From the NCBI GenBank assembly GCA_001179505.1, contig CDMY01000708.1:124001-188000 (forward strand): a stretch of DNA of 64,000 nt, given 5' to 3'. Origin of the DNA: Vitrella brassicaformis CCMP3155. Taxonomy: Eukaryota > Protista > Chromerida. A program made the translations under genes and the position numbers. The notes beneath the pieces were generated by a model. It saw nothing but the letters and a program-made list of their open reading frames with translations, did no database searches and was not told the DNA's origin. Every line of letters starts with the position of its first letter. Position 1 is the stretch's first letter. Below are positions 25,333-32,200 of this stretch, one piece after another.

Positions 25333-26013
25333 TCAGTCGTTGTCTTGTGTGAGGAAGACGCCGTCGATCATCCAGCAGCCGCGGTGCAGGCTCAGCCGAA
25401 AGTCCACCTCCTTACGGAAGAACTCACGGTCGCTCCACGACTGGAAGTTCGGATGGTGGCCCTCCAGCACCACTCGCTGCACGCAGTGCTCCTTGTTGCT
25501 GTCGTACTGAGGCGGACCCACAAACTCAAACGTGTCGCGGTTCAGCAGCACTCGGTACTCAGAGTTGCGCAGATAGCTGCCGTACTGCGCTGGGTTGAAG
25601 TTGCTGATGATGTTGTCACGGGAGGCGTGCTTGATCGTCACTGCGGCACCGTGGTCAAGCTGCGGGTCGTCGTTGGTCTGCAGGGCGTCCAGCACCTTCT
25701 CAATCACCACCCGGGCGTCCTCGCCAGGCTGCGGCAGGTCCCCCCGCCTCTCCAGAACAACCCACTGACCAAACCACTGCTCGGGGTGCTTCTCTGGCGG
25801 CGGGAGCTGCTCCTGACCACGGCCGCCCGACGCCTCGCCTTCTCCCTCAATGGATGCTCCAAGCCTCGACGTCTGCAGGTCGCCGTCCCTCGGATCTCGC
25901 CTGCTCGGCTGGCGCAATGAATGGGACGACGGCGACAGAGATCCAGATGGCACAAACACGGGATGCCAAGCCCATGCAACGGGCAGAATAAGGGCACTGA
26001 TGACACCTTTCAT
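25333..26013 (-). CDS. Single-exon, probably plastid-targeted protein with a DUF4864-like (algal/cyanobacterial) domain
   Basis: Signal-peptide-like MKGVISALILPVAWAW, then a Ser/Pro/Arg-rich transit-like segment. Core VVIEKVLDALQTNDDPQLDHGAAVTIKHAS..YRVLLN..VQRVVL..GCWMIDGV. Family assignment is from remembered pattern only. Confidence 0.65.
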   Translation of the reverse strand: MKGVISALILPVAWAWHPVFVPSGSLSPSSHSLRQPSRRDPRDGDLQTSRLGASIEGEGEASGGRGQEQLPPPEKHPEQWFGQWVVLERRGDLPQPGEDARVVIEKVLDALQTNDDPQLDHGAAVTIKHASRDNIISNFNPAQYGSYLRNSEYRVLLNRDTFEFVGPPQYDSNKEHCVQRVVLEGHHPNFQSWSDREFFRKEVDFRLSLHRGCWMIDGVFLTQDND

Positions 26014-26321
26014 CTTCCGCGGACACATCGAGAGACACACAGACACAGGGAGGAAGAGAGGCAACTGCGAGCTCAGCTGGCGATCGGAAAATGAGGCGCT
26101 TTCCCCGACGGACGCAGATTGGACACACCATCTGCCCTCAGGAGCCGGGGCCTCGGTGCCCGTTTCAACGAGCAGGAGTTTTGGCTGGCGGAGAACACGA
26201 GATCTACCACGAGCCGGATTCAGCGCCAATGGGTGGTCAGCAGACATGCAAGGTGCCTAAGTGTGAGAAGTCGGTCAGCTCTGCCAGCAGTTTGTGCATC
26301 AACGGCTCAAATCTATTGGCA

Positions 26322-29156
26322 ATGAGTACCAGCCTGTACGTCAGCCTGTCGCTTCTCAGCGTCGTCACGGCGGCTTCCTTCAGCAACGGCAATCACGGAC
26401 TCCCCTCCTTCGCGCAGCTGCCAAACGTTCGGCATGATCCATCGAGAATCATCAGGCGTCGCTTTCGGCATCTCCCGCTGCCTCACGTCCAGACAATCAC
26501 TGCCCCAGTTTCGGCTGATGAATCAGCCACAAAGGATGCTGCTGCAGTAGATTTCGGGCGAGTCGCAGCACTACAGCAGGCGATTGCTGATGGCACTGTG
26601 ACGGCGGTGCGGACGACGCTGTCTGACTCCATCAAGAACCACTGTCGGCTTGGGGCGAGAGGCCGACGGACGCGGATCTTTGTGGGAACAGACATTCTGG
26701 AGAGGGGAGCCATTGATGAGCTGTGGGAGAGTGTGCACGTTGCCTTTCCTATCTTGAGGAAGATGGACATCCCCTCCCACCTCTATGCGGCCTATGGCGG
26801 CGGGGAGGCTGCGGTCGAAGGTGACGCTGATGTGGTTGACTCTGCTCATGCCCTCAAGTCTGTATGGTCGAAAGCACACTCACGTGGTGAGAAGCTGGGA
26901 CTGCTGGTCAGGCCTGACGACAGCAAGTGGCCGCCCCCTCTCCCCGAGTGGCTCGTCGACTGCCCTGATCCGACCGAGAGTCCCACCATGACGCTCGTCT
27001 CCTTCTATCGTTTCACGCCGATAGAGGACCCGCAGTTGATGGCCGAGAGTTTCAGGAAGCTGTGGGAGCCGCTCAAGGCGCTGGGGAGGGTATATGTGGC
27101 GTCTGAGGGAGTGAATGCCCAGATGGCTGTGCCGACAAACGTCCTCTCGGCCTTTGCACGAGCCTGCAACAGCACCTCTGTCCTCGACGGCGTCCCACTA
27201 AACTGTGATGTGGCCATTCCAATGCTCGAGTATTGGGGCGACCAAGGTTCTTTCGAGAGATGGAAGGAGGAGAACCCGTCAGATGTTCACATGCAGCACG
27301 TCCCCCGCGCATTTGCACATAGCGATGACCAAAGTGACGAGAGCAGCGGGGAAGACCCGTCCCTCTCGCCGCGACGAGCGGTGCCTGGCAGGACGCGGGC
27401 GCCCTTCGAGAGGCTGCACATCCGTGTCCGCAAGCAGATTGTGGCTGACGGGTTGATGAGGCCGCTGGACTGGGGGAGGGAGACTGGGAGGGAAGTGTCC
27501 CCCGAGGAGTGGCATGAGAATGTCAATCGTTCGGATGTCCTGGTTCTCGACTGCAGGAACACGGTGAGTGAGCGGCAAGACAGCCGTGAGCATTATGGTA
27601 TGGATTGTTCGGTGTTGGTGCGTAGTATGAGACGGACGTCGGCCGATTCGACACAGCCGTGCCACTCAATACGACCTACTTCCGCGAGAGCTGGGATGCG
27701 CTAAACGAGACGCTCAAGGACGTCGACAAAGAGGCGCCTATCATGATGTACTGTACTGGTGAGCGAGTCAAGAACACCAAACACATCAACCGCCTGGCAC
27801 TAAGCGTCGCTCTCGCCCCCCTGCGTGTCTGTAGGTGGAATCCGCTGCGTCAAGACCGGCGCGTACCTCGTCCAAGAGCTCGGCTTCCGCAATGTGGGAC
27901 GGCTTGAAGGCGGCATCATCAACTACGCCAAATACGTCAAGGGAAAAGGCCAGCCCTCACTATTCAAGGGCCGCAACTACGTGTTCGACAACCGCATGGG
28001 CGAGAACATCACCCCTGACGTGCTGGCCCAGTGCGTGCAGTGCGGGAAGCCCTGGTCGCTGCACACCAACTGTCGATATGAGCGGTGCCACGTGCGGTTC
28101 CTGCAGTGCGACGAATGTGCCGAGAAATACGGGGGATGCTGCTCACGGTAGGTGGGGGCCCGACACATGCTGATGCAGCACTCCGTTCCATCTTTATGGT
28201 GCATTCTTGTCTTGTCAGGGGCTGTCAGCGGCAGCATGAGCGGTCTCTTGTCGAGACAGACACACATGCATCATCCGACGGAGGATGGCTGGAACCGCCC
28301 TTCCAAAACGCGCAGCTCAATCGTATGTTCGATGATGCACTCGAGGCCTACGCAGAGCAGCACTCGACGAGCGAGCCCCCCCTGCTGGCCGACCTGCGGC
28401 AGCGTACAGCGGCGGAGATGCCTCATGCCCTCCGCATGCTCAGCGGGCCATTGGTTGGGCGCCTCTTGGCCACATTGTCGCGCCTTTTGCGACCGGAAAG
28501 GATACTTGAGATAGGTGAGAGAGGACCGATACACGGTTGCATGTTCCTGTTCACTTTCTTGCTCTGTGGGGTGTGCAGGGACGTTCACTGGGTACAGCGC
28601 TGTGTGTTTCGCTGAGGGCTTGGCTGATGGAGGGCAGCTGGTGACGATTGAGAGGGACGAGCGTGCCGCAGCCATCGCACGAGAGTTCTTCGACAGGTCG
28701 CCGTTTGGCCCGTCTATCGACCTGCGTGTGGGCATGGCCGCCGACGTGCTGCCTCATCTCCGGGGCCAGACATTCGACCTCGTGTTCATCGACGGCGACA
28801 AGAAGAAGTACAAGGAATATTATGACTACATCCTGGAGGAGGGAATGCTGTCGGCCAGGGGCCTGATGCTTGTGGACAATGTGCTCTGGAAAGGCGGCGT
28901 TTTGCTTTCTGATGGTGAGACGAGCGATCGGTACAATGAGTGGCTGGCCAATGAAGAAACGAGGAGAGGTCTATCGGGCGATGACAGTAGAGATGGCGAG
29001 AGAAGGGAGGCTGATTTAGTGAAGCTTAGGAAGCGTCATGAGTCGTTGTGGCGTGCCATGGATGAGTTCAATCGTCATGTGAGGGATGACCCCAGGACAG
29101 AGCAGGTCATCTTGCCTATTCGGGACGGACTCTCGGCAATAAGATTAAAGGGTTGA
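26322..29156 (+). CDS. trhO: Fusion protein: bipartite leader + unknown domain + TrhO (YceA/UPF0176) tRNA U34 hydroxylase rhodanese + Methyltransf_3 (CCoAOMT/TrmR-like) O-methyltransferase
   Basis: Leader MSTSLYVSLSLLSVVTAASF. TrhO motifs: SFYRF..LGRVYVASEGVNAQ, RLHIRVRKQIVADG, VLDCRNTYE..GRF, YCTGGIRC, LEGGIINY, FKGRNYVFDNR, CVQCG..NC..C..QC..C..GCCS..C. OMT motifs: LEIGTFTGYS, FDLVFIDGDKKKY, VDNVLWKG, LPIRDGL. Introns at 27564-27625, 27759-27834, 28148-28218 and 28515-28578 all restore frame with GT-AG ends. Confidence 0.9.
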
Positions 29157-29219
29157 GTGCCACCCTCGCACCTGATTTGGTTTAGGGCACGACGTGGCCT
29201 GAAACCGCTGACGCTGAGC

Positions 29220-32200
29220 ATGAACACAAGAAATGCACTAACTACGGCCACGAGTGCTGTCCAAGGCGAGTCAGAAGCTCCAATGGCTCGCTCAGAACCT
29301 CCCCGCAACCCATCCACAGCCACAACCATGCCGACTCCTCCCCCTCCCGAACAGCCAGCATCATCCTTCCTCACATCCAGCTTCAGCACCGCTCGCGACA
29401 CTGCTACAGCCGTGCTCAACGCCCGTCGAGCCATCGGCGTCCCCCGACTCATCCGCATGTGCTATGGCGCAGACAGAAAGCCGGGCAACTTCGACGGCCT
29501 GCAGCCGCTCCCTCGCAGAGGCAGCGGCGCTCCCGGCCTGCCCACCATCCCCGAGAGCCGCGATCAGGCCGCCATCACTCAGAATGGCCTGCCACATGGC
29601 GTGAGTGAGCCGCCCTCCTTCCCAAGCGCGCCTGGGAGGGCAGGCATGCCGTCGATGCAGCAGCGAAGGCGGCCGTTTCGCGATGCGTTTAGGCAGCGTC
29701 TGTTGTGTATGGGTCCGCGGCCTGGCAAGGAGGGCGGTTTGCTGGGAGTGGACAGAGAGGGGTCGTCGGAGGCATCGACCCACAGGGTGGAAGGGGCATA
29801 CTCAGGTGGGCGGTGGGAGGGAGGGAGCGAGGGAGGGAGGGAGCGAGGGAGCGAGGGAGGGAGCGAGGGAGGGAGGCACCTGTGTCTGTGTCTGTCGCAT
29901 TCCACCTCTGTGTGTGTGTGTGTGTGTGTGTGTGCAGCGTTGACGGACGAGGCGCTGCTTGAGCGAGAGGAGGATTACGGCTATGACGACGAGGGCGACT
30001 TCGATGACGCCCGATCGGACTTCTACAGCCAAGGTGACTTACCTGCCCTCACTCATCAACGTCTTGTCATACGCTGTTGTGCCGCCCTTGTCGGCCGTGC
30101 AGTTGACCGTTTGTCCAACTACGACCCGACCGAGATAGCGGGCATCTTGTCGGTGTCGGCGTCGGGCTACCAGACGCCCCTCTCGGACCTCCTGCAGTTC
30201 GTGCTGGGCAACTTCGAGGAACGCAGAATGAGATTCAACACCATACAGGTGCGCCCTCGCGTGGGCAGCATGGCACGGCATTCGTTTGTGCACATCTGTC
30301 TGTGTGTTGACGTGTATGTTGTGGTCAGGGTAAGATCCGCACCGGCAATGGTGTGGCGGAGGTGCCTGCGGACTGGGACAGGACGTCTGAGATGAGGGCG
30401 CTGGCGGAGCTGCTCGTCGACACGTCACGGGCGTGCATGGTCAGTCCAGTGGCCGCACACACACGCAGACTAGTGTCGGTTGGTATGTACCTGTACTGCA
30501 TGTGTGTGGATGGATGGATGGATGGACAGAATGAGGATCCCAATGTGGATTGTGCGCTGGCGTACAACCACCATGGCGTCAAGGTGTGGAAGAAGGAATT
30601 CGGTGTCGGCAGACTCCTGCTCAGAGGTACAGACAGAACGACAGACAGACAGACCCTCCTGTGTGTTTGGTGTTGATGCAGCTGAGTGGGTGGTGCCGGT
30701 GGCCCCAAAGCAGTACTGTGAGTATGCGTCGGACGTACGGTGAGGCAGTCAGTCAGTCAGTCAGTGAGCCCCAAGAGAGAGGTCCGGCCACCTCTGTGTA
30801 TGTGTGTGTGTTGGTGTCGGTTCCATGATTCAGTTATCGCAAGATATGGGACAGCAACTGTGCTGAGGTGCAGCGGCTCGAGACCCTCGGCGACGGCATC
30901 GACCTCTGCTACGTCGCCACCAAACGAGTCGCAACAGTGAGCACCTGATTATACCACCCACACACACACAGACTGACAGACAGACAGACAGACGCCATCT
31001 CTTTTGGGTCCAGATTTTCCCGCGCGACACGGTGAATCTGCGCATCGTTCGTCCGCTGGACCCGTCGTCGCCCCTGGACTGCGCCTACTCGTCGTGCAGC
31101 TGCTCAATCGAACACCCTGAGATTGGCGACAGGTGCGTCACTTCACGTCAGTCAGCCCCCTGTCCCCCTCCCTGGTGTCATGCATGATATGTTCGACTGA
31201 CTGACTGAGTGACAGGCCTGGCAAGGTACGTGCCGACCTTCGCATCGCTTCGTACGTCGCAAACCCACTCCCGACGCCATTCGGATGTGAGGAATGACAA
31301 ACAGGCAGACAGGCAGACAGACAGACAGGGATAGGCAGCGGGGCCCAGAGCACCCCTATTTGAGCGCATCCGTTTGTCTCTCTGCGTTTGGTGTGTGGCG
31401 TCTGGCCTGTCAGTGTGGTCTCGCATATGTCTCTTCAACGAGGGCGATCCCCGTGGGTGGATCCCCGCTGCCGTCACAAAACTCCTGGCCGTCAAGGTAT
31501 GGCCCCCTGGCCAGCTCACACACAGCGGCCATCTGTATATGTGTGTGTGTGTGTGTGTGTGCGTGAAGGTGGTGCCGAGTTCGGTTGAGAAGGTGACCAA
31601 GGCCATCATGGAGAAGCACACCATCGCATGGGACGGCGAAAAGGCCAGCGGGTGGGCCGCCACACAGCTCGACCAAGCAGGATTCGTCATCCCACCGTAA
31701 GCACACACCCCCCACCCCCCATCCCCACCACCAGCACCACCAACCACACACATATGCACACCACACTGGGTGCTTGTTGGTTGGTTGATGCGATGCGTGC
31801 AGTCGCCCAAAACTGCCCATTGCGGACGCGCAGCTTTTGCTGTACGAGCAGTCCCTCAGCCTCAACGCGTCACAGCAGCAGATGGACGAGGACGGCCCCA
31901 CCACACCCATAGTCACCCTCGGCAAACGCCGCACGTCGTCATTCGTGTCGGCCGACGACTCACCCATACCCACCACCAACCACCCGCACACACACCCCTT
32001 CCACGCCTCTCTCCCCCACACCAGCTCACCCACGGCAGCAGCAGCGGCATCGCATGACTTTGGCTATGGGCGCATCCCCATGGCCAAGCAGATAGGGCCC
32101 ATGACATGGGTGGCGGAGGCGCCGCCATCCCCCACCTCACCCACCACAGGCATGTTTGAGTATCCAGCATCATCGCCACTGACGTTGCCTGAGAAGGGCA

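What the first reader, a model, noticed from the sequence alone, without database searches (positions are those of the whole stretch)
26322..29156. TrhO-TrmR-type fusion: candidate single-polypeptide pathway for 5-methoxyuridine (mo5U34) tRNA modification in a complex plastid
Seen: after removing the GT-AG intron 28148-28218, the TrhO C-terminal Cys cluster (GCCS-R-GC) runs in frame, with no stop, into a complete Methyltransf_3 O-methyltransferase; the protein starts with a signal peptide plus transit-like leader. Established: bacterial TrhO (YceA) hydroxylates wobble U34 to ho5U using O2, and Bacillus subtilis TrmR (YrrM), a CCoAOMT/Methyltransf_3-family enzyme, methylates ho5U to mo5U. Inference: this is a Rosetta-stone fusion of the two consecutive steps, acting on plastid tRNAs. 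I do not know of a described eukaryotic or organellar mo5U pathway or of this fusion being functionally assigned. An automatic annotation would probably read only 'rhodanese + O-methyltransferase'.
Basis: partly seen in the sequence, partly recalled or inferred. Interest (0 to 1): 0.88.

Follow-up and report, generated by a model that had tools for sequence, protein, structure and literature searches.

The report
TrhO–O-methyltransferase fusion gene in Vitrella
This is a real, expressed five-exon gene of the alga Vitrella brassicaformis that joins a tRNA wobble-uridine hydroxylase (TrhO) to an O-methyltransferase; it probably makes 5-methoxyuridine in organellar tRNA, but the same fusion in other protists was already published in 2019 as the clue that identified TrhO.

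Summary
A five-exon gene (26322-29156, +) encodes about 853 aa. Single transcript contigs from two runs carry all four GT..AG splices, including 28147/28219, so TrhO and the methyltransferase are one reading frame.

The organism is Vitrella brassicaformis. The public model already has one protein with all domains, but it lacks the first 147 aa.

The TrhO part passes NCBI's curated TrhO threshold and keeps the CTGGIR loop. The methyltransferase is a complete Mg-type Methyltransf_3 domain, but it is not TrmR-like. It sits closer to the Coxiella, Synechocystis, Legionella and Bacteroidota enzymes and to plant CCoAOMTs. It lacks the conserved TrmR arginine signature.

The fusion is widespread: diatoms, a chrysophyte, a red alga and Paulinella. 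Sakai et al. 2019 used the same fusion in Phytophthora and Phaeodactylum to pick out TrhO.

Plastid targeting is plausible (hydrophobic start, Phe after an AAS cut site, basic tail). It is unproven: the start codon is ambiguous, homologues' leaders vary, and plastid-less oomycetes have the fusion.

Verdict: a new member of a known, untested kind. Moderate interest.

The parts
26322..27563 (+). Exon 1 (aa 1-414): leader, beta-grasp N-domain, UPF0176_N and the start of the rhodanese domain. The alternative in-frame start at 26229 would add 31 aa.
   Evidence: Open frame and GT donor. Covered without a break by transcript contigs X6 rec13 and X7 rec17. ATG 26229 is the first AUG in those contigs, read directly from the sequence.
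26322..26579 (+). N-terminal leader (aa 1-86). It has a hydrophobic segment at aa 5-18, then AAS followed by Phe20, then a basic Ser/Pro/Arg/His-rich stretch. It resembles a bipartite plastid-targeting signal.
   Evidence: Kyte-Doolittle maximum of 2.19 at residue 5, and leader pI 10.7. Phe after the cleavage site is typical of chromerid plastid proteins, though less strict in Vitrella (PMC6668581). No dedicated predictor was available.
26598..26915 (+). Conserved N-terminal domain (aa ~93-198) with a ubiquitin-like/PB1-like beta-grasp fold. It is shared by fusion homologues and has no Pfam family.
   Evidence: Alignment with 30 homologues. AlphaFold pLDDT 86.5, pTM 0.75. Foldseek best matches are PB1, UBL and SAP18 domains at weak E-values of 0.014 or more. 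The public model P0001 starts inside this domain.
26991..27440 (+). UPF0176_N (TrhO N-terminal, acylphosphatase-like) domain, aa 224-373, with a lineage-specific insertion of about 60 aa.
   Evidence: Pfam PF17773, 5.9e-21.
27564..27625 (+). Intron 1 (62 nt, GT..AG).
   Evidence: Joint 27562/27625 in X6, X7 and X1, absent from the genomic contig X4.
27498..27926 (+). Rhodanese domain (aa 393-489), spread over exons 1-3. The active-site loop C-T-G-G-I-R-C (aa 457-463; 27752-27848) is split by intron 2.
   Evidence: Pfam PF00581 on P0001. C200, T201, G203 and R205 of this loop are essential in E. coli TrhO (PMC6599085). Coordinates.
27759..27834 (+). Intron 2 (76 nt, GT..AG).
   Evidence: Joint in X6, X7 and X1.
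27966..28228 (+). Rhodanese_C Cys-rich domain (aa 503-566), crossing intron 3.
   Evidence: Pfam PF12368, 1e-19.
28148..28218 (+). Intron 3 (71 nt, GT..AG). This is the junction that creates the fusion. If retained, the frame stops at TAG 28149-28151.
   Evidence: Joint 'skips 71' in single contigs of X6 and X7, with 255 nt on the shorter side, and in X1. No joint in X4.
28286..28333 (+). Conserved linker motif W-L-x-P-P-F-Q-x-x-x-L-N-x-x-F-D between TrhO and the methyltransferase (aa 586-601).
   Evidence: Present in the fusion homologues and also in brown-algal orthologues whose methyltransferase module has decayed.
28358..29144 (+). Methyltransf_3 O-methyltransferase domain (aa 610-850), on exons 4-5. 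The SAM motif LEIGTFTGYS is split by intron 4. The metal/catalytic residues D733, K736, D761 and N762 are present. A lineage-specific 42-aa helical insertion lies at aa 771-812 (28905-29030).
   Evidence: Pfam PF01596, 3.1e-39. Invariant D, K, D, N columns in alignment A2. Model pLDDT 91.3, insertion predicted helical. The insertion is absent from most homologues.
28515..28578 (+). Intron 4 (64 nt, GT..AG).
   Evidence: Joint in X6, X7 and X1.
29154..29156 (+). Stop codon TGA.
   Evidence: The transcript contigs end at 29162-29164.

Best explanation
The locus is a nuclear gene of Vitrella brassicaformis for one polypeptide of about 853 aa. It consists of an N-terminal targeting leader, a small beta-grasp domain, a complete TrhO module (UPF0176_N, rhodanese with the CTGGIR loop, Cys-rich Rhodanese_C), a conserved linker and a complete Mg-dependent class-I O-methyltransferase.

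The most likely mechanism has two steps. The TrhO module binds tRNAs that carry U34 and read four-codon boxes, and uses O2 to make 5-hydroxyuridine. The tethered methyltransferase then uses SAM, with the 5-OH/4-oxo pair held on Mg2+ as in catechol-type enzymes, to cap it as 5-methoxyuridine. The ionisable ho5U intermediate is therefore never released.

The methyltransferase does not descend from Firmicute TrmR. It belongs to the clade of the SynOMT, Coxiella, Legionella and Bacteroidota enzymes. The most likely site of action is the plastid, which encodes its own bacterial-type tRNAs.

Shown: gene structure, splicing, domain content, intact catalytic motifs and the wide conservation of the fusion. 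Inferred: both enzyme activities, the substrate of the methyltransferase and the compartment.
For: One spliced transcript contig spans both halves in two runs.

TrhO module: NCBIfam equivalog NF001133 scores 202 bits against a cut-off of 170. The solved tRNA U34 hydroxylase 9j5o matches at 3.8e-36. The CTGGIR loop is intact, and its C, T, G and R are essential in E. coli.

Methyltransferase module: Pfam 3.1e-39 over the full length. The metal triad and Lys are invariant across 52 relatives. The fold is confident.

The fusion is kept in many eukaryote lineages: diatoms, Mallomonas, Pyropia, Paulinella, and Phytophthora and Phaeodactylum from the literature. The fusion methyltransferase domains cluster together in a tree.

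The only known product of TrhO is ho5U34, which needs alkylation.

The bacteria whose enzymes are the nearest solved relatives (Coxiella, Legionella, Synechocystis), and aerobic Bacteroidota, are listed by Sakai et al. as TrhO-positive, CmoA/CmoB-negative and PF01596-positive. That is the pattern expected if this clade does the capping step.

Leader: hydrophobic start, AAS followed by Phe, basic tail. Several diatom homologues also have signal-peptide plus AF-type leaders. Myzozoan mitochondrial genomes carry only three protein genes, which leaves the plastid as the organelle with its own tRNAs.
Against: No activity, modification or localisation data exist for any eukaryotic member.

The methyltransferase is more similar to enzymes that methylate small catechols in vitro than to TrmR. 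The TrmR tRNA-binding arginines are not conserved. The Arg-86 position is Arg in only 24 of 54 fusions, and the Arg-90 position is Ala. The core of the domain is not basic: pI 6.0 in Vitrella, median 6.8 in fusions.

Anaerobic Bacteroides and Porphyromonas have PF01596 without TrhO. Three Bacteroidota loci show no trhO-methyltransferase adjacency.

Brown-algal and xanthophyte orthologues have lost the SAM and metal motifs, so the second step is dispensable in some lineages.

Targeting: ATG 26229 is the first AUG in the transcript contigs and would bury the hydrophobic segment 35 aa in. Homologues' N-termini are a mix of signal-peptide-like, presequence-like and none. Oomycetes have the fusion without a plastid.
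Confidence: 0.6

Rival explanations
1. Same bifunctional tRNA enzyme, but it works in the mitochondrion or cytosol (or is dually targeted) on nuclear-encoded tRNAs rather than in the plastid.
For: Plastid-less Phytophthora has the fusion. Many homologues have Arg/Ser-rich presequence-like N-termini or none at all. The first AUG of the assembled transcript (26229) gives a non-canonical N-terminus. Translation-related proteins in chromerids are often dually targeted.
Against: Starting from ATG 26322, the leader has the form of a signal peptide, then Phe at +1, then a transit-like region. xo5U34 is a bacterial-type modification, and the plastid is the compartment with bacterial-type tRNA genes. 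The myzozoan mitochondrial genome encodes three proteins only.
Confidence: 0.22
2. The methyltransferase domain methylates a small catechol-like metabolite, or another non-tRNA substrate. The fusion with TrhO would then reflect co-regulation or a shared compartment, not consecutive steps.
For: The nearest solved and reviewed relatives are small-molecule enzymes: PaMTH1, SafC, SynOMT, LiOMT, MdmC and CCoAOMT. The TrmR arginine signature is absent. The domain is acidic to neutral. PF01596 occurs without TrhO in anaerobic Bacteroidales.
Against: The fusion, with a conserved linker motif, is maintained across very distant eukaryotes. The physiological substrates of the Coxiella, Legionella, Synechocystis and Bacteroidota enzymes are unknown, and those genomes have TrhO but no CmoA/CmoB. 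A tethered TrhO can supply the tRNA binding.
Confidence: 0.12
3. The TrhO-like module has a function other than U34 hydroxylation (for example sulfur transfer, or hydroxylation of another RNA position), and the methyltransferase acts on that other product.
For: Rhodanese-fold proteins are functionally diverse. No eukaryotic TrhO homologue has been tested. The extra beta-grasp domain and the insertion in UPF0176_N are not found in bacterial TrhO.
Against: The module scores above the curated TrhO equivalog cut-off. All loop residues shown to be essential are present, as is the basic R-x-R-K strand preceding the rhodanese domain.
Confidence: 0.05
4. The main products are two separate proteins (TrhO ending at TAG 28149-28151, and a separately expressed methyltransferase), and the joined form is a minor isoform.
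For: Contigs drop rare variants, so intron retention cannot be excluded.
Against: All contigs that cross the site in X6, X7 and X1 are spliced, and only the genomic run keeps the intron. No ATG-initiated, stand-alone methyltransferase ORF exists, since the SAM motif is itself split by intron 4. Orthologues elsewhere are fused as well.
Confidence: 0.02

Closest known systems
yceA(trhO)-'trmR' fusion genes of Phytophthora sojae, P. ramorum and Phaeodactylum tricornutum (Sakai et al. 2019, Nat Commun 10:2858, Fig. 3b)
   Same: Same architecture (TrhO followed by Methyltransf_3 in one gene) and the same Rosetta-stone reading. Diatom homologues align along the whole length, including the N-terminal beta-grasp domain and the linker.
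   Different: Different lineage (a chromerid alveolate). It has a signal-peptide-like leader and a 42-aa insertion in the methyltransferase. None of these fusions has been tested experimentally, and the paper calls the species 'bacterial'.
Escherichia coli TrhO (YceA), oxygen-dependent tRNA U34 hydroxylase; solved homologues 9j5o and 4f67
   Same: UPF0176_N + Rhodanese + Rhodanese_C. CTGGIR loop. Above the NCBIfam equivalog cut-off.
   Different: Extra leader and beta-grasp domain upstream, an insertion of about 60 aa in UPF0176_N, and a methyltransferase fused downstream.
Bacillus subtilis TrmR (YrrM), tRNA ho5U34 O-methyltransferase (5zw3/5zw4; Ryu et al. 2018)
   Same: Same Pfam family and fold. 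Same SAM-binding and Asp/Asp/Asn metal residues. The same reaction is predicted.
   Different: Not the nearest subfamily: 139.5 bits against 215 for Coxiella 3tr6. Arg-90 is absent and Arg-86 is not conserved in the clade. Ryu et al. found TrmR orthologues only in Firmicutes.
Cation-dependent bacterial O-methyltransferases: Coxiella 3tr6, Synechocystis SynOMT 3cbg, Legionella 3r3h, Leptospira LiOMT 2hnk, and the ~213-aa Bacteroidota enzymes
   Same: Closest in sequence and structure: 40-50% identity to the Bacteroidota proteins, and the top PDB profile hits. The same catalytic residues.
   Different: These are stand-alone proteins with no helical insertion. They are known only from in-vitro methylation of catechol-type small molecules or from structural genomics, and their cellular substrates are unknown.

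Membership tests
TrhO (oxygen-dependent tRNA uridine(34) hydroxylase) | Domain order UPF0176_N - Rhodanese - Rhodanese_C | tested here: met
   Pfam on P0001: PF17773 at 77-226, PF00581 at 246-342, PF12368 at 356-419.
TrhO (oxygen-dependent tRNA uridine(34) hydroxylase) | Score above the curated NCBIfam equivalog cut-off (NF001133, 170 bits) | tested here: met
   202.2 bits, E 8e-60.
TrhO (oxygen-dependent tRNA uridine(34) hydroxylase) | CXGGXR active-site loop with the Cys, Thr, second Gly and Arg shown to be essential in E. coli | tested here: met
   Y-C-T-G-G-I-R-C at aa 456-463 of the spliced model. Mutational data from PMC6599085.
TrhO (oxygen-dependent tRNA uridine(34) hydroxylase) | Forms ho5U34 on tRNA with O2 | not testable with these tools
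   Needs biochemistry or RNA mass spectrometry.
TrmR (Firmicute-type tRNA ho5U34 methyltransferase) | Methyltransf_3 fold with SAM site and Asp/Asp/Asn Mg site | tested here: met
   PF01596, 3.1e-39. Invariant D, K, D, N columns. Model pLDDT 91.3.
TrmR (Firmicute-type tRNA ho5U34 methyltransferase) | [quoted passage not shown] 2018) | tested here: not met
   Positions were counted from the invariant Glu-85 equivalent (aa 686). The Arg-86 position is Arg in Vitrella, but in only 24 of 54 fusions and 16 of 210 stand-alone relatives. The Arg-90 position is Ala (38 of 54). Arg-178 could not be mapped, because no TrmR sequence was available for alignment.
TrmR (Firmicute-type tRNA ho5U34 methyltransferase) | TrmR is the nearest characterised relative | tested here: not met
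   5zw3 is the 37th distinct PDB sequence and 8k1f the 43rd in the profile search. Neither is in the Foldseek top 50 of PDB chains, and no TrmR is in the Swiss-Prot top 30.
TrhO-methyltransferase fusion (Sakai et al. 2019) | Both modules in one reading frame on one transcript | tested here: met
   Spliced contigs X6 rec13 and X7 rec17. The public protein P0001 carries all the domains.
Bipartite plastid-targeting signal of red-lineage complex plastids | N-terminal ER signal peptide | tested here: inconclusive
   Hydrophobic segment at aa 5-18 (Kyte-Doolittle 2.19) with small residues at -3 and -1. No SignalP or ASAFind was available. The start codon is ambiguous (26229 or 26322).
Bipartite plastid-targeting signal of red-lineage complex plastids | Phe at +1 after the cleavage site, followed by a basic, hydroxylated transit-like region | tested here: met
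   AAS then F20, followed by an Arg/His/Ser/Pro-rich stretch. Leader pI 10.7. The motif is described in PMC6668581. This rests on an assumed cleavage site.
Bipartite plastid-targeting signal of red-lineage complex plastids | Protein located in the plastid | not testable with these tools
   Needs a tagged leader or organelle proteomics.

The most novel reading that the evidence does not exclude
The methyltransferase domains of these eukaryotic fusions may form a second lineage of tRNA ho5U34 methyltransferases, independent of Firmicute TrmR. This lineage would also include the stand-alone SynOMT, Coxiella, Legionella and Bacteroidota-type enzymes found in genomes that are TrhO-positive and CmoA/CmoB-negative. 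If so, mo5U34 exists in the plastids (and perhaps mitochondria) of red-lineage algae and in many Gram-negative bacteria where it has never been reported. Several 'catechol O-methyltransferases' of unknown physiological role would then really be tRNA enzymes.
Probability: 0.4. Interest if true: 0.6.

Novelty: new member of a known kind. Interest (0 to 1): 0.38.

Why it matters
xo5U34 modifications let one tRNA read three or four codons of a box. That is exactly what a plastid with a small tRNA set needs, yet they are documented only in bacteria. A single nuclear gene that carries both steps gives a clean handle to test whether mo5U exists in a eukaryotic organelle. It would also show how the reactive ho5U intermediate is channelled, and whether a non-TrmR branch of Methyltransf_3 was recruited for the job. 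The practical gain here is smaller: a corrected gene model (147 aa longer, with a leader and an unrecognised beta-grasp domain), and the warning that 'TrmR' in comparative tables means only 'PF01596 present'.

Tried and rejected
1. ESM Atlas search with the N-terminal domain gave glycoside-hydrolase 85 clusters at low recognition (1743, below 2300). I treated these as chance.

2. Gene neighbourhoods of three Bacteroidota methyltransferases and one Bacteroidota trhO showed no trhO-methyltransferase adjacency. The only RNA-related neighbours were rlmN next to one methyltransferase and queG next to trhO. This is not informative.

3. The charge and pI of the methyltransferase core showed only a modest shift in fusions (median pI 6.8 against 5.6), and Vitrella's own is 6.0. 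This is not evidence for an RNA-binding surface.

4. The 42-aa insertion was considered as a possible tRNA-binding element. I rejected it as a conserved feature because it is absent from most fusions.

5. A residue-level alignment to B. subtilis TrmR could not be made. No TrmR sequence was retrievable through the tools, and I did not type one from memory. Only the positions adjacent to invariant anchors were mapped.

6. Literature searches for mo5U or ho5U in plastids, apicoplasts, diatoms or Bacteroidetes, and for any study of a eukaryotic TrhO fusion since 2019, found nothing relevant.

7. Earlier findings of this scan: nothing at this place or for these words.

8. The upstream ATG 26091 as start lies outside both transcript contigs. 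It is not excluded, because the contigs break at a dispersed repeat.
Full report
Observation.

The region 26322-29156 (+) contains five exons: 26322-27563, 27626-27758, 27835-28147, 28219-28514 and 28579-29156. Each intron is GT..AG. Joined, the exons give an uninterrupted 853-codon frame ending in TGA. With intron 28148-28218 retained, the frame would end at TAG 28149-28151, directly after ...GGCCSR. With it removed, the frame runs on through a linker into the methyltransferase.

Laying public assemblies on 25900-29500 shows the spliced form directly. One 2682-nt contig of run X6 (26210-29164) and one 2777-nt contig of run X7 (26117-29162) each carry all four joints (62, 76, 71 and 64 nt skipped). 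Run X1 shows the same joints in shorter contigs. Run X4 has a 21.9-kb contig colinear with the window and no joints, so it is the genomic form.

Two caveats apply. The library kinds of X6 and X7 are not recorded. Contigs also cannot exclude a minor unspliced isoform.

Identity and public annotation.

A protein search returns a 100%-identical 706-aa protein of Vitrella brassicaformis CCMP3155. It is named only 'unnamed protein product / Rhodanese domain-containing protein', and it already carries PF17773, PF00581, PF12368 and PF01596. It starts at an internal Met, aa 148 of my model.

That model is truncated at the N-terminus. The 147 aa upstream are in frame and inside the transcript contigs, and they align with a domain conserved in 30 fusion homologues.

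Anatomy.

From the N-terminus the protein has:
- A leader (aa 1-86).
- A conserved domain (aa ~93-198) that AlphaFold models confidently (pLDDT 86.5) as a beta-grasp. Its weak structural matches are PB1, ubiquitin-like and SAP18 domains. No Pfam family matches.
- UPF0176_N (aa 224-373).
- Rhodanese (aa 393-489).
- Rhodanese_C (aa 503-566).
- A conserved linker motif, WLxPPFQxxxLNxxFD.
- Methyltransf_3 (aa 610-850).

Both catalytic signatures are split by introns: CTG|GIR by intron 2 and LEIG|TFTGYS by intron 4. The transcript evidence is therefore also evidence that both modules are made intact.

The TrhO module.

It scores 202 bits on NCBI's TrhO equivalog model, against a cut-off of 170. It matches the solved tRNA U34 hydroxylase 9j5o at 3.8e-36. 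It keeps the C, T, G and R of the CTGGIR loop, which Sakai et al. showed to be essential in E. coli. I file this half as a TrhO family member. Its activity is inferred.

The methyltransferase module.

It is complete. The Asp/Asp/Asn metal ligands and the Lys are invariant in an alignment of 52 relatives, and the fold is confident (pLDDT 91.3). It is not 'TrmR-type' in any sense narrower than the Pfam family.

- By single sequence, the best solved relatives are Coxiella 3tr6, Podospora PaMTH1 and Synechocystis SynOMT. TrmR 5zw3 reaches only 4e-15.
- A profile of the clade gives 3tr6 215 bits, 3cbg 204, Legionella 3r3h 200, LiOMT 197, human COMTD1 167, CCoAOMT about 160, TrmR 139.5 and 8k1f 122.
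- Foldseek against the PDB and against Swiss-Prot models puts catechol-type enzymes first and no TrmR in the top 30 to 50.
- The closest stand-alone proteins are ~213-aa Bacteroidota enzymes at 40-47% identity.
[quoted passage not shown] Counting from the invariant Glu-85 equivalent, the Arg-86 position is Arg in Vitrella but in only 24 of 54 fusions. The Arg-90 position is Ala. Arg-178 could not be mapped.
- The 42-aa insertion (aa 771-812) is predicted helical but is lineage-specific.

Distribution and precedent.

TrhO plus Methyltransf_3 in one protein is common in the databases. It occurs in diatoms (Cylindrotheca, Nitzschia, Cyclotella), Mallomonas, Pyropia, Paulinella micropora and many metagenomic sequences. 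JGI's pipeline already labels some of them 'predicted sulfurtransferase/predicted O-methyltransferase YrrM'. In a tree, the fusion methyltransferase domains group together, apart from the bacterial stand-alone ones (supports 91 and 93; quick method, midpoint root).

Most important, Sakai et al. [quoted passage not shown] They used that, together with proximity to cmoA in cyanobacteria, to select yceA as the second hydroxylase. So the Rosetta-stone reading is published. Their 'TrmR' column is simply presence of PF01596: Arabidopsis, Danio and Dictyostelium all score 1. I found no later study of any eukaryotic member, and no report of mo5U in a plastid or a eukaryote.

Does the methyltransferase act on ho5U?

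The direct evidence is the fusion itself, conserved with its linker across distant eukaryotes, and the fact that ho5U34 is the only known TrhO product.

One further piece is circumstantial but pointed. In Sakai's table, Coxiella burnetii, Legionella pneumophila, Synechocystis, Acaryochloris, Cytophaga and several flavobacteria are TrhO-positive, CmoA/CmoB-negative and PF01596-positive. These are the very organisms whose enzymes are the nearest relatives of this domain.

Against this:
- Anaerobic Bacteroides and Porphyromonas have PF01596 without TrhO.
- There is no operon linkage in three Bacteroidota loci.
- The domain is not basic.
- In brown algae and Tribonema, the C-terminal module keeps the linker but has lost the SAM and metal motifs.

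I put the two-step mo5U reading at about 0.6.

Compartment.

Starting from ATG 26322, the N-terminus has a hydrophobic segment (aa 5-18), small residues at -3 and -1, Phe at +1 and a basic Ser/Pro/Arg/His-rich stretch. This is the form described for chromerid plastid proteins, although Phe is less strict in Vitrella. Several diatom homologues have a comparable signal peptide plus AF-type leader.

There are three reasons for caution. The first AUG in both transcript contigs is the in-frame ATG 26229, which adds 31 aa ahead of the hydrophobic segment. About 9 of 47 full-length homologues look signal-peptide-like, while the others look presequence-like or have no leader. Oomycetes have the fusion but no plastid.

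Because myzozoan mitochondrial genomes hold only three protein genes, the plastid is the compartment with its own bacterial-type tRNAs. That makes it the more natural site. I rate plastid localisation at a little over one half.

Verdict.

This is a new member of a known but experimentally untouched kind of gene. The value added here is the corrected gene model, the unrecognised beta-grasp domain, the reassignment of the methyltransferase to the SynOMT/Bacteroidota-type clade, and a sharpened hypothesis that this clade, rather than TrmR proper, caps ho5U wherever TrhO occurs without CmoA/CmoB.

Noticed in passing
window 26117-26164: A 48-nt stretch in the 5' region of the gene also occurs, with 1-2 mismatches and different flanks (one followed by (AACG)n), in other contigs of the genomic run. 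It has about ten-fold higher summed depth in the RNA-like runs. It occurs once in this window. It looks like a short dispersed repeat, and both transcript contigs break at or near it, so the true 5' end is uncertain.
   Followed up: partly
window 27250-27297: A 48-nt piece of exon 1, inside the insertion of the UPF0176_N domain, matches with one mismatch other, longer contigs (3.8-9.4 kb) in three runs whose flanks are unrelated. A second locus therefore shares this short segment. X6 and X7 carry the spliced gene, so that locus is probably expressed.
   Followed up: no
window 25336-26247 (-): A divergently oriented upstream ORF with a weak DUF4864 match (E 0.008) and an internal Met followed by a signal-peptide-like stretch. 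Transcript contigs from the upstream side reach about 26035-26060. The two genes therefore share an intergenic region of roughly 60-200 nt.
   Followed up: partly
P0001 (public Vitrella protein) versus window 26322-26762: The public gene model starts at an internal Met (MDIPSH..., aa 148). It cuts off the leader and half of a conserved beta-grasp domain, so any targeting prediction made on it would be wrong.
   Followed up: yes
P0023 (Scytosiphon), P0034 (Ectocarpus), P0035 (Tribonema), P0046, P0015: Orthologues in brown algae and a xanthophyte keep the TrhO module and the WLxPxPFQ...LN..FD linker. Their C-terminal module is a decayed methyltransferase: LEIGTFTGYS is replaced by LAVGLGSGG-like sequence, and the DxDK and DN metal motifs are lost. 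Only weak profile matches remain (E 6.6e-8 to 0.6).
   Followed up: partly
P0241, P0242, P0244, P0246, P0250, P0254, P0256, P0257: Among the closest relatives of the methyltransferase domain are proteins of 475-553 aa with two Methyltransf_3 matched stretches each (probably two tandem domains). They nest within the eukaryotic fusion clade in the tree. Their source organisms are unknown.
   Followed up: partly
P0121 (Euglena gracilis transcript), P0249: The best-scoring stand-alone relatives are eukaryotic ~350-aa proteins with an N-terminal extension of about 120 aa ahead of the methyltransferase domain. They may be organelle-targeted unfused versions.
   Followed up: no
L005 5001-5642 and L002 3938-5008: In a Flavobacterium MAG, the related methyltransferase lies divergently next to rlmN. 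In Sanyastnella, trhO lies just downstream of queG. Both neighbours are RNA-modification genes, but there is no conserved linkage.
   Followed up: no
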